DNA of 63,310 bases, counting the filler, from Octopus bimaculoides (taxonomy: Eukaryota): assembly GCF_001194135.2 (NCBI RefSeq). It is 8 parts of 8 records of this genome, joined end to end, with 100 filler letters (N's around TTAATTAATTAA, not from the genome) between each part and the next. Parts side by side here need not be neighbours in the genome. Positions count along the whole stretch, not along the records: positions 37,422 to 47,182 come from NW_026363011.1; 7 more parts are not named here. One strand, given 5' to 3'. The position numbers and the translations under genes were made by a program. Each line of letters opens with the position of its first letter. The stretch's first letter is position 1. The notes below the pieces were generated by a model. It did not search any database, was not told where the DNA came from, and saw only the letters and a list, made by a program, of their open reading frames with translations. Positions 40,331 through 41,502 of this stretch are shown in pieces.

Positions 40331-41120
40331 TTCCTTTCTATTTAATTACTTTCTATCACTAATACCTTACTAAACCTCACTGATTCTACTCTAATTGTTT
40401 TTTTTTTTAGGGAAAACCACTATTTGTTGTTGATGATTGCCCTCGTCAATGCCTTCTAACTAATTCTCTAATCCGATCTCTCTCATCTAAGCCTATGTGG
40501 GTCGATTGTACAAATCACAAATTTGTTGTCCGTGTTGTCGACCAGTTTGAAAAGTGGACAACTTATACTATTTTTACCTATTGTCCTACAAAATACCCTG
40601 TCTAAATGCAGGTGTGAATGAGACTGGAACTGATAACAGTGAATATCTGTTACCTGGCAGGTTAGGCCCAGTCGTCATCTAGTGACTGCAATATGAAAGG
40701 AAGGAGAAAAGATGGAATGCAGCTTTGATTGAATGTTATGTTCGAAGTGAACCTAGCAGGTTTGGCTACGTTGGACAGAATGAGAGAGATATGGTTTAAA
40801 AAGGGAACGTGTGATGTAACCAAGGAAGACATAAGAATGAAATGCTGGTTAACCGAAGTAGAAATCGAAGAAATCAAATACAGAATATATTAGATGGAAA
40901 ATAGCAAGGTAAGACAGGAAGACATCAATGACACTGAAATAAGAGAGATGGAGGTTCAACAGCAACAACAACAGCAACAACAATATCATTGGCTTCAAAT
41001 TTTTGCACAATGCCAGCAATTTCGAAGATAGAGGAGTAAGTGGATTACGTCATCTCTAGTTTTCTTAGTTATCTTAACGTAGAAGTAAAAAGAAAAAAAC
41101 AACACAACAACTTCACTTAC

Positions 41121-41418
41121 TTTTATAGAAGGAAATCTCGTTTTTGTCATTCGTGCTGACGACTGTCATCAAATTTTTCGGTGAGTAATTCTTACAAACA
41201 TGGCTGAGTTTGTTGTAAGTAAAGAATTCTGATTGGCTGTTTGCAGCGATGATGGCACATTCCAGTAGACTTCGCCTTTGATAAAATTGTTCTGTTTGAG
41301 ATGTCTGAAGGTAACGATAGGAATAACCAGAACCCAAAGAATTGTAGTTGCCTTCATTGAAGTGCTGATCTGAGGTAGCGACCAGAATTGTGGTAAGGGT
41401 TAGCAGCAGCACCCTCAT
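41121..41418 (-). CDS. First coding exon of a predicted secreted protein (signal peptide plus PAN/apple-like Cys-containing segment); downstream exons not found
   Basis: ATG at 41418. 99 codons + 1 nt: MRVLLLTLTTILVATSDQHFNEGNYNSLGSGYSYRYLQTSQTEQFYQRRSLLECAIIAANSQSEFFTYNKLSHVCKNYSPKNLMTVVSTNDKNEISFYK. Perfect GTAAGT donor at 41120-41115. Pyrimidine tract plus AG (tttccttttacccgtctAG) ends at 41424, 5 nt before the ATG. Hydrophobic N-terminus; SLLEC...FTYN...C pattern. Confidence 0.7.
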
Positions 41419-41502
41419 CCTAGCTAGACGGGTAAAAGGAAACTGGCACATTCTTGGCTCTAAGATCACCAGAAGGAGACACAAGGAGACAGAATTGTAT
41501 GA

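What the first reader, a model, noticed from the sequence alone, without database searches (positions are those of the whole stretch)
41115..41445. Secreted-protein exon nested antisense in the putative GLDC intron
Seen: a clean 99-codon exon with ATG, signal-peptide-like N-terminus, GTAAGT donor and an acceptor 5 nt upstream of the ATG, which implies a further non-coding exon. It has no stops or repeat character in an otherwise decayed region. The SLLECA...FTYN...C pattern resembles mollusc PAN/apple-like N-terminal segments. I recall a multi-copy family of uncharacterised octopus proteins starting this way, but that is unverified. It lies 15.6 kb upstream of, and antisense to, the GLDC exon. 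If GLDC exons 1-3 lie upstream, this is a nested, lineage-specific secreted gene of unknown function. I could not find a phase-1 downstream exon, so it may be hidden in a gap, too diverged, or the gene is an orphaned fragment.
Basis: partly seen in the sequence, partly recalled or inferred. Interest (0 to 1): 0.7.

Follow-up and report, generated by a model that had tools for sequence, protein, structure and literature searches.

The report
First exon of octopus PAN-like gene
This is the first coding exon (secretion signal plus a degenerate PAN/apple binding module) of one copy of a large, tandemly repeated octopus family of uncharacterised secreted proteins. It is a real but ordinary gene fragment whose remaining exons lie beyond the edge of the sequence or have been lost.

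Summary
A GTAAGT donor follows in phase 1.

It matches Octopus proteins only. The best hit is O. sinensis LOC118761915 (82% identity, E=1e-51). About 70 gene models in three Octopus species and Argonauta belong to the family. Full-length members have about 295 residues in five exons: signal peptide, PAN-like domain, and a 185-residue C-terminal domain with no Pfam family.

PAN identity is supported indirectly:
- Paralogues give only sub-threshold Pfam PAN hits.
- Distant homologues with the same architecture pass the PAN_1 cut-off.
- A paralogue's predicted N-domain superposes on the HGF N domain and a factor XI apple domain.
- The octopod array keeps only the outer cysteine pair.

Exons 2-5 are not in the piece. 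The 3.7 kb downstream of the donor holds a LINE fragment, SINEs and microsatellites. Intron 1 in paralogues ranges from 0.57 to 11 kb.

Polarised changes on this copy's own branch are 14 non-synonymous to 2 synonymous, so ongoing constraint is not shown.

The "nested in GLDC" claim is void, because that exon lies in an unrelated piece.

Verdict: a new member of a known, uncharacterised family; low interest.

The parts
41121..41451 (-). Coding part of exon 1: 110 codons plus 1 base, running from ATG 41451 to the last exon base 41121.
   Evidence: tblastn of 15 homologues covers 41451-41122; E=1e-51 to P0001.
41371..41451 (-). Predicted signal peptide, residues 1-27 (MCQFPFTRLARMRVLLLTLTTILVATS). 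The likely cleavage site is before DQ.
   Evidence: Read from the sequence. The equivalent residues 1-33 of paralogue P0021 are unstructured in the AF2 model, with pLDDT below 50. No SignalP run was possible.
41122..41370 (-). Degenerate PAN/apple-like domain, residues 28-110. It keeps Cys65 and Cys86 and the FTYN motif.
   Evidence: alignments; Pfam; weak PDB profile hit to MIC4 apple domains; fold match of the paralogue N-domain to the HGF N domain and FXI apple A4.
41115..41120 (-). Splice donor GTAAGT, phase 1.
   Evidence: The closest copy has the same donor sequence AGTAAGTGA. The 'SK*'/'GK*' tails of the 112-aa single-exon models fit read-through of such a donor (inference). Every paralogue exon 2 begins after a phase-1 acceptor.
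41452..41525 (-). 74-nt stretch directly upstream of the ATG, 96% identical to the closest paralogue. It is a candidate 5'UTR or promoter-proximal segment. It contains a possible acceptor, cttag|AGCCAAGA, 8 nt before the ATG.
   Evidence: 71/74 identical, against 88% in the exon and the intron; alignment of five copies. Its function is inferred, not shown.
41501..41549 (-). (CTTT)12 microsatellite, reported as (GAAA)n on the + strand, at the 5' edge of the conserved upstream block. Three of the four paralogous copies aligned carry an obvious CT-rich repeat at this place.
40612..41120 (-). The proximal part of intron 1 that is still homologous to paralogues.
   Evidence: 41121-40732 aligns to L001 10331-10718 at 88.8%. 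40820-40612 aligns to L003 10563-10771 at 76.6%.
38845..40265 (-). Decayed non-LTR retrotransposon (LINE) fragment inserted in intron 1, in the same orientation as the gene.
   Evidence: RVT_1 (E=8.5e-8) and zf-RVT (E=1e-4, below the Pfam cut-off) on minus-strand ORFs.
37930..38336 (-). (TTA)n microsatellite of about 135 units with a 26-N assembly gap at 38019-38044. It is probably the tail of the LINE.
37500..37920 (-). Two tandem SINE copies, each ending in an (ATT)n tail. A third copy lies at 45391-45617.
   Evidence: many copies in L001 and L002.
37422..37426 (-). The last 5 bases of the piece (AGAGC), after (TTA)n-TTGAGTGAG. They equal the first 5 bases of exon 2 in the closest paralogue. 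This is a very tentative exon 2 start, cut by the piece edge.
   Evidence: four of the five paralogue copies have a trinucleotide microsatellite abutting TATTTCAG|exon 2 (the fifth has ATGTCAG and a more distant repeat), and L001_a exon 2 starts AGAGCCAATGG. Caveat: the microsatellite here may simply be a SINE tail, and 5 nt proves nothing.

Best explanation
The feature is exon 1 of one paralogue of an octopod-expanded, tandemly arrayed gene family.

Full-length members are secreted proteins of about 295 residues, built from five exons. Exon 1 encodes the signal peptide and a degenerate PAN/apple module. That module has kept the outer Cys1-Cys4 pair and lost the inner Cys2-Cys3 pair. Exons 2-5 encode a 185-residue beta-rich, Cys/Trp-conserved extracellular domain that has no Pfam family.

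Shown: the homology, the exon boundary and phase, the PAN-type fold of the paralogue N-domain, and the absence of exons 2-5 from the piece.

Inferred:
- The transcript starts at or just upstream of the conserved 74-nt block.
- It is spliced from 41121 across an intron 1 stretched by a LINE and SINEs, to an exon 2 beyond position 37422.
- The product is secreted and acts as an extracellular binding or recognition protein. The PAN module would mediate protein or carbohydrate contacts. The C-domain would be a possibly lectin-like second binding unit.

Whether this particular copy is still functional is open; I lean slightly towards yes.
For: - Homology: E=1e-51, 82% identity to O. sinensis LOC118761915, and 14 further Octopus hits. 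About 70 family models exist in O. sinensis, O. bimaculoides, O. vulgaris and Argonauta hians.
- All invariant and nearly invariant exon-1 columns of the family are kept in the window peptide.
- Donor and phase are identical to the paralogues.
- Five-exon structure was mapped in L001, L002 and L003. Intron 1 is 0.57, about 1.5, 2.4, 2.5 and 11 kb in five copies, so 3.7 kb without exon 2 is not abnormal.
- PAN: sub-threshold PAN_3/PAN_1 hits in paralogues. PAN_1 above its cut-off in Aplysia, Mytilus, Antedon, Anneissia and Asterias homologues; three of these (Aplysia, Mytilus, Asterias) are ~300-aa two-domain proteins, the crinoid ones larger multidomain proteins.
- Fold: the AF2 N-domain of P0021 (72% identical to the window peptide) matches the HGF N domain (3hmr, prob 1.0, rmsd 3.0 A over 84 columns, TM 0.65) and FXI apple A4.
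- Cysteine pattern.
- The upstream 74 nt is 96% conserved, against 88% elsewhere.
- Overall dN/dS against the closest copy is 0.39, Fisher p=0.004.
Against: - None of exons 2-5 is in the piece on either strand.
- Exon divergence (11.8%) equals intron divergence (11.2%) against the closest copy.
- When the differences are polarised with three outgroup paralogues, the window branch carries 14 non-synonymous and 2 synonymous changes. That shows no sign of purifying selection. They include P41S in the conserved GPGYSY motif and L71A. The sister branch carries 7 and 11.
- A sense-oriented LINE and two SINEs sit in the intron.
- The exact ORF is in no gene catalogue searched.
- There is no expression evidence of any kind.
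- The biochemical function is entirely inferred.
Confidence: 0.58

Rival explanations
1. It is an orphaned or pseudogenised 5' fragment. A partial duplicate, or a copy broken by transposon insertions or rearrangement, has kept exon 1 and its upstream block but no longer makes a full-length protein. The open frame survives only because too little time has passed.
For: - No downstream exons are in the piece.
- Family-specific homology is confined to about 1.1 kb (41696-40612) and then gives way to repeats.
- The window branch has 14 N and 2 S changes, against a neutral expectation of about 3.6:1, and two of them hit conserved positions.
- The exon is no more conserved than the intron.
- Degenerate copies occur in these arrays. 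L001 copies b and c have ATA in place of the first ATG, and the closest relative appears frameshifted in exon 3.
- With about 16 substitutions on this branch, keeping an open frame by chance is not unlikely (my estimate is roughly 50%).
Against: - The frame, both cysteines, all invariant family positions and the consensus donor are intact.
- There is no indel in 330 nt, against 4 indel events in 390 nt of intron. This is weak evidence.
- The upstream 74 nt is 96% conserved.
- Intron 1 reaches 11 kb in an apparently complete paralogue, and the piece simply ends 3.7 kb downstream.
- The synonymous counts are oddly asymmetric (2 against 11), which warns that the polarisation with paralogous outgroups is noisy.
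Confidence: 0.37
2. It encodes a short, PAN-only secreted protein. Exon 1 would be spliced directly to a small terminal exon, or read through to the stop at 41113, like the 110-126-aa models annotated in O. vulgaris and O. bimaculoides.
For: Six O. vulgaris models join exon 1 to the last exon (...GIADSMAIFISLKP). Several O. bimaculoides models are single-exon read-throughs ending in RSK*.
Against: At the one such locus examined (P0005, L003), exons 2-4 are all present between the two annotated exons. The short model therefore looks like exon skipping or a mis-annotation. The RSK* ends are simply read-through of the conserved donor. No terminal exon of this kind is in the piece.
Confidence: 0.05

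Closest known systems
Octopus sinensis LOC118761915 (XP model P0001) and the octopod 'uncharacterized protein LOC1187685xx / LOC1068xxxxx' array. UniProt auto-names some members 'Apple domain-containing protein'.
   Same: 82% protein and 88% nucleotide identity in exon 1. Same start codon, same donor and phase. Homologous upstream block and proximal intron.
   Different: This copy has a much longer, transposon-filled intron 1, and no exon 2-5 is visible. It carries unusual substitutions at two conserved positions (P41S, L71A). It is identical to no catalogued model.
PAN/apple domains (Pfam PAN_1 PF00024, PAN_3 PF08277), for example the HGF N domain, plasma prekallikrein / factor XI apple domains, and apicomplexan MIC4.
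   Same: The predicted fold of the paralogue N-domain matches. The sequence pattern C...(F/Y)xY(N)...C aligns with bona fide PAN_1 domains of distant homologues. There is a weak profile hit to MIC4 apple domains.
   Different: Only the outer cysteine pair is kept and the inner C-x3-C...C pair is lost. No Pfam PAN model reaches its cut-off on the window peptide or on any octopod array member tested.
The single-copy-looking Octopus gene LOC118764338 / LOC106884519 and the ~300-aa 'PAN + C-domain' proteins of Aplysia, Mytilus, Crassostrea, Pomacea and sea stars.
   Same: Same two-domain architecture and size. Recovered by the family profile, most of them over nearly their full length.
   Different: These keep all four PAN cysteines. 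The Octopus gene lies on another chromosome-scale contig than the array. Identity to the window peptide is only 12-24%.
Fibrinogen-related domains (FReD: ficolins, angiopoietins, FGL1). These are relevant only to the C-terminal domain of the family, which is not in the window.
   Same: FReDs recur as weak Foldseek matches (TM 0.3-0.39, prob 0.44 or less). UniRef labels three Pomacea family members 'Fibrinogen C-terminal domain-containing'.
   Different: No Pfam Fibrinogen_C hit even at E=10, no PDB sequence hit, and no significant fold match. This is a lead only.

Membership tests
Octopod PAN-like + C-domain secreted protein family (LOC118761915-like) | Significant sequence similarity of exon 1 to family members, with the invariant family residues kept | tested here: met
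   E=1e-51 to 5e-28 against 15 members. M1, C65, Y79, C86, Y89, T96 and the near-invariant positions are all present.
Octopod PAN-like + C-domain secreted protein family (LOC118761915-like) | Exon 1 ends at the same codon, with a phase-1 GTAAGT donor | tested here: met
   the read-through tails 'SK*' in the single-exon models.
Octopod PAN-like + C-domain secreted protein family (LOC118761915-like) | Exons 2-5 encoding the C-terminal domain lie downstream on the same strand | not testable with these tools
   They are absent from the 3.7 kb available. The piece ends at 37422, and paralogue introns reach 11 kb. The source genome cannot be queried here.
Octopod PAN-like + C-domain secreted protein family (LOC118761915-like) | N-terminal signal peptide | tested here: inconclusive
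   The n/h/c regions are visible in the sequence, and the leader is disordered in the AF2 model of a paralogue. No dedicated predictor was available.
PAN/apple domain superfamily | Pfam PAN model above its gathering score | tested here: not met
   Window peptide: no PAN hit at E up to 10. Array members: best PAN_3 score 17.0 bits against a cut-off of 21.1. Distant homologues do pass, three of them with the same two-domain architecture (PAN_1 26-33 bits against 21.4).
PAN/apple domain superfamily | PAN fold (a helix packed on a curved beta-sheet, as in the HGF N domain) | tested here: met
   Tested on paralogue P0021, whose N-domain is 72% identical to the window peptide: 3hmr prob 1.0, TM 0.65, rmsd 3.0 A; 2j8j FXI A4 TM 0.55. 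The window peptide itself was not modelled.
PAN/apple domain superfamily | Core cysteine pattern (outer C1-C4 and inner C2-C3 disulfides) | tested here: not met
   Only C1 (Cys65) and C4 (Cys86) are kept. C2 and C3 are replaced across the octopod array. Four cysteines are present in P0070 and in the distant homologues. The domain is therefore best called a degenerate PAN-like domain, homologous by descent.
Fibrinogen-related domain (for the family's C-domain only) | Pfam Fibrinogen_C match or a significant fold match | tested here: not met
   There are only weak fold hits and UniRef auto-names.

The most novel reading that the evidence does not exclude
The exon belongs to a fast-evolving, octopod-specific repertoire: about 20-26 loci per Octopus species, in tandem arrays, with the inner PAN disulfide lost. 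Its C-terminal module would be a widespread but uncurated extracellular domain of marine invertebrates (1087 clusters at 50% identity, no Pfam model, no confident solved-structure relative). The array could then be a lineage-specific recognition system, immune or chemosensory/adhesive, and the excess of amino-acid changes on this copy would reflect diversifying selection rather than decay.
Probability: 0.2. Interest if true: 0.5.

Novelty: new member of a known kind. Interest (0 to 1): 0.22.

Why it matters
For this window it matters little. It is one more copy, possibly partial, of a gene family that RefSeq and UniProt already list as uncharacterised.

The family itself is worth a note:
- It is a large octopod tandem expansion of secreted two-domain proteins that nobody has studied.
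- Its PAN module is degenerate enough to escape Pfam.
- Its C-terminal domain is common in molluscs, echinoderms, hemichordates and amphioxus, yet has no curated family and no solved structure.

The case also shows a practical point. Many short Octopus gene models of this family (110-126 aa) are truncations or exon-skipped annotations of five-exon genes.

Tried and rejected
- Pfam on the window peptide gave only a chance NleG hit (E=0.058, below its cut-off), which I rejected.
- tblastn of all family proteins against the piece found no exon 2-5. A weak triple hit at 37889-37854 lies inside a SINE copy and is chance. A 'GIAD' match at about 39000 lies inside the LINE zf-RVT region and is chance.
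- An exact look-up of the 112-aa read-through ORF found nothing on record, so the source locus could not be extended.
- I thought some models lacking exon 1 (P0046-P0050) might mark the source locus. They simply start at an internal Met of exon 1.
- The (TTA)n + AGAGC at the piece edge was considered as the start of exon 2. It is kept only as a hint, because the octopus SINE and LINE tails are also (ATT)n.
- Profile searches of PDB sequences gave only MIC4 at E=0.56 for the N-domain and nothing for the C-domain.
- Fold search of the C-domain alone gave no significant match.
- Three literature searches (octopus + apple/PAN domain, LOC identifiers, UniProt accessions) found nothing on this family.
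- The indel-based test of constraint was uninformative.

Full report
**1. What is in the sequence**

On the minus strand the text reads ...TTC TAT AAA A|GTAAGTGA. The exon therefore ends at 41121, and the donor GTAAGT occupies 41120-41115 in phase 1. The frame is open back to 41685, but upstream of 41460 it runs through a (CTTT)n microsatellite and is meaningless.

There are two in-frame ATGs:
- ATG 41451 (MCQFPFTRLARMRV...) gives 110 codons.

The leader has three arginines, a 12-residue hydrophobic core (VLLLTLTTILVA) and A-T-S|D. That is a typical signal peptide as read from the sequence. No predictor was available.

**2. It is not chance, and the recalled family exists**

The 112-aa read-through peptide matches 15 proteins, all from Octopus, at E=1e-51 to 5e-28. 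The best is O. sinensis LOC118761915, at 82% identity.

Searches with a longer member and with a family profile raise this to about 70 clusters:
- about 26 loci in O. sinensis
- about 20 in O. bimaculoides
- about 19 in O. vulgaris
- 6 in Argonauta hians

Most lie on one chromosome-scale contig per species, plus unplaced scaffolds.

Full-length members have 293-296 residues. The window peptide keeps every invariant and nearly invariant exon-1 position of the family.

**3. Gene structure of the family**

Mapping proteins onto three fetched loci (L001 and L002 from O. sinensis, L003 from O. vulgaris) gives five exons:

| Exon | Residues |
|---|---|
| 1 | 1-110 |
| 2 | 111-171 |
| 3 | about 170-226 |
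| 4 | 227-279 |
| 5 | 279-296 |

Exon 1 ends at the same codon, with the same AGTAAGTGA donor, in the closest copy. The 112-aa models ending 'RSK*' look like read-throughs of that donor (inference). Exon 2 always begins after a phase-1 acceptor (TATTTCAG in four of the five copies), usually right after a trinucleotide microsatellite.

Intron 1 measures 0.57 kb, about 1.5 kb, 2.4 kb, about 2.5 kb and 11 kb in five copies.

The 115-126-aa O. vulgaris models join exon 1 directly to exon 5. At the one such locus examined (P0005), exons 2-4 are nevertheless present.

**4. The window copy**

Window 41525-40732 aligns to the LOC118761915 locus at 85%. Broken down:

| Segment | Identity |
|---|---|
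| Exon 1 | 88.2% |
| Proximal intron | 88.8% |
| 74 nt upstream of the ATG | 96% |

Homology to the O. vulgaris locus runs from 41696 to 40612. Beyond that the intron holds, in order:
- a decayed sense-oriented LINE (RVT_1 and a sub-threshold zf-RVT hit, 40265-38845)
- a 400-bp (TTA)n tract with a 26-N gap
- two SINE copies
- a final (TTA)n

The piece then ends.

No exon 2-5 is found anywhere in the piece on either strand.

The last five bases of the piece (AGAGC, after ...TTGAGTGAG) equal the first five bases of exon 2 in the closest paralogue, and they follow a microsatellite as in all paralogues. The octopus SINE and LINE tails are also (ATT)n, however. I treat this only as a hint.

**5. 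Is this copy under constraint?**

Overall dN/dS against the closest copy is 0.39 (Fisher p=0.004).

I then polarised the 39 differences with three outgroup paralogues:

| Branch | Non-synonymous | Synonymous |
|---|---|---|
| Window | 14 | 2 |
| Sister (LOC118761915) | 7 | 11 |

The window branch shows no sign of purifying selection. Its changes include P41S in the conserved GPGYSY motif and L71A. The asymmetry of the synonymous counts warns that the polarisation is noisy. The indel comparison is uninformative.

The intact frame, the intact donor and the well-conserved upstream block argue for function. The substitution pattern and the transposon load argue for relaxed constraint or diversifying selection. 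I rate 'first exon of a still complete gene' at about 0.58 and 'orphaned or pseudogenised fragment' at about 0.37.

**6. What the exon encodes**

Pfam gives no PAN hit on the window peptide. Array members give only sub-threshold PAN_3/PAN_1 hits.

A profile search of 1.84 billion representatives finds 1087 clusters. Among them are ~300-aa proteins of the same architecture from Aplysia, Mytilus, Crassostrea, Pomacea, a chiton and sea stars, and larger multidomain proteins from crinoids. Several of these homologues pass the PAN_1 cut-off at 26-33 bits against 21.4.

In a joint alignment, the canonical C-x3-C...C...C pattern of those homologues lines up with SLLECAIIAANSQSEFFTYNKLSHVCKNY. The octopod array has kept the first and fourth cysteines and lost the inner pair. 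A separate Octopus gene on another chromosome-scale contig keeps all four.

An AlphaFold2 model of paralogue P0021 (pLDDT 78) places its N-domain on the HGF N domain (prob 1.0, rmsd 3.0 A, TM 0.65) and on factor XI apple 4. A PDB profile search gives a weak hit to MIC4 apple domains.

The domain is a degenerate PAN-like module by descent and by fold, but it fails the formal Pfam and cysteine criteria.

**7. The rest of the protein (not in the window)**

The C-terminal 185 residues have no Pfam family. They have no PDB sequence hit and no significant fold match, even when modelled alone at pLDDT 81.

Fibrinogen-like domains recur as weak fold matches, and UniRef labels three Pomacea members 'Fibrinogen C-terminal domain-containing'. 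This is a lead, not a result.

In other phyla the domain sits in mosaic extracellular proteins with sushi, EGF, ZP, F5/8 type C and D8C modules. That fits an extracellular binding role.

**8.

The GLDC exon lies outside this piece, and the window was assembled from unrelated pieces, so nesting has no basis here.

The acceptor proposed 5 nt upstream of ATG 41418 lies in sequence that the paralogues translate, and it is not conserved in the closest copy. A different candidate acceptor (cttag|AGCCAAGA, 8 nt before ATG 41451) follows a long pyrimidine tract. It is identical in the closest copy and similar in L002, but absent from L001 copies b and c. A non-coding upstream exon therefore remains possible but untested.

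**9. Verdict**

This is a real first exon of a known but uncharacterised, octopod-expanded secreted PAN-like family. It is a new member of a known kind and of low interest in itself. The completeness and activity of this copy cannot be decided from 9.8 kb.

Noticed in passing
window 38845-40265 (minus strand): Decayed non-LTR retrotransposon fragment (RVT_1 and a sub-threshold zf-RVT hit, split across several short ORFs). It sits inside the putative intron 1 in the same orientation as the gene, and is followed by a (TTA)n tail of about 400 bp containing a 26-N assembly gap (38019-38044).
   Followed up: partly
window 37500-37920 and 45391-45617: Three copies of a short dispersed element (a SINE-like unit with an (ATT)n tail). 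Two are in tandem near the piece edge. Many copies occur in the O. sinensis loci L001 and L002.
   Followed up: partly
window 43174-43722 (+): A 182-codon ORF encoding the N-terminal HTH part of a Tc1/mariner-type transposase (HTH_Tnp_Tc3_2, E=2.6e-12). The catalytic half is missing.
   Followed up: partly
window 42253-42814 and 45758-46587: Two further dispersed repeat families with many copies in L001, L002 and L003. The first is flanked by (CA)n/(TG)n microsatellites that form long imperfect inverted repeats.
   Followed up: no
L001 14284-14438 (O. sinensis LOC118761915 locus): Exon 3 of the closest paralogue matches family proteins in two different frames, an apparent frameshift or assembly error. 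This probably explains why its RefSeq model is truncated at 182 aa and uses a far 3' exon 40 kb away.
   Followed up: partly
L003 10001-24443 (O. vulgaris, P0005 locus): The annotated 126-aa model joins exon 1 to exon 5, although intact-looking exons 2-4 lie in between. Five other O. vulgaris models have the same shape, so these short proteins are probably annotation artefacts or exon-skipped isoforms.
   Followed up: partly
L001 4132-3800 and about 50307-49975: Two further exon-1 copies in the O. sinensis array have ATA in place of the first ATG. They would have to start at the downstream Met, or they are pseudogenes.
   Followed up: no
family C-terminal domain (not in the window; e.g. P0021 residues 111-295): An extracellular domain of about 185 residues, found in 1087 clusters at 50% identity across molluscs, echinoderms, hemichordates and amphioxus. 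It has no Pfam model and no confident structural relative, only weak fibrinogen-like hints.
   Followed up: partly
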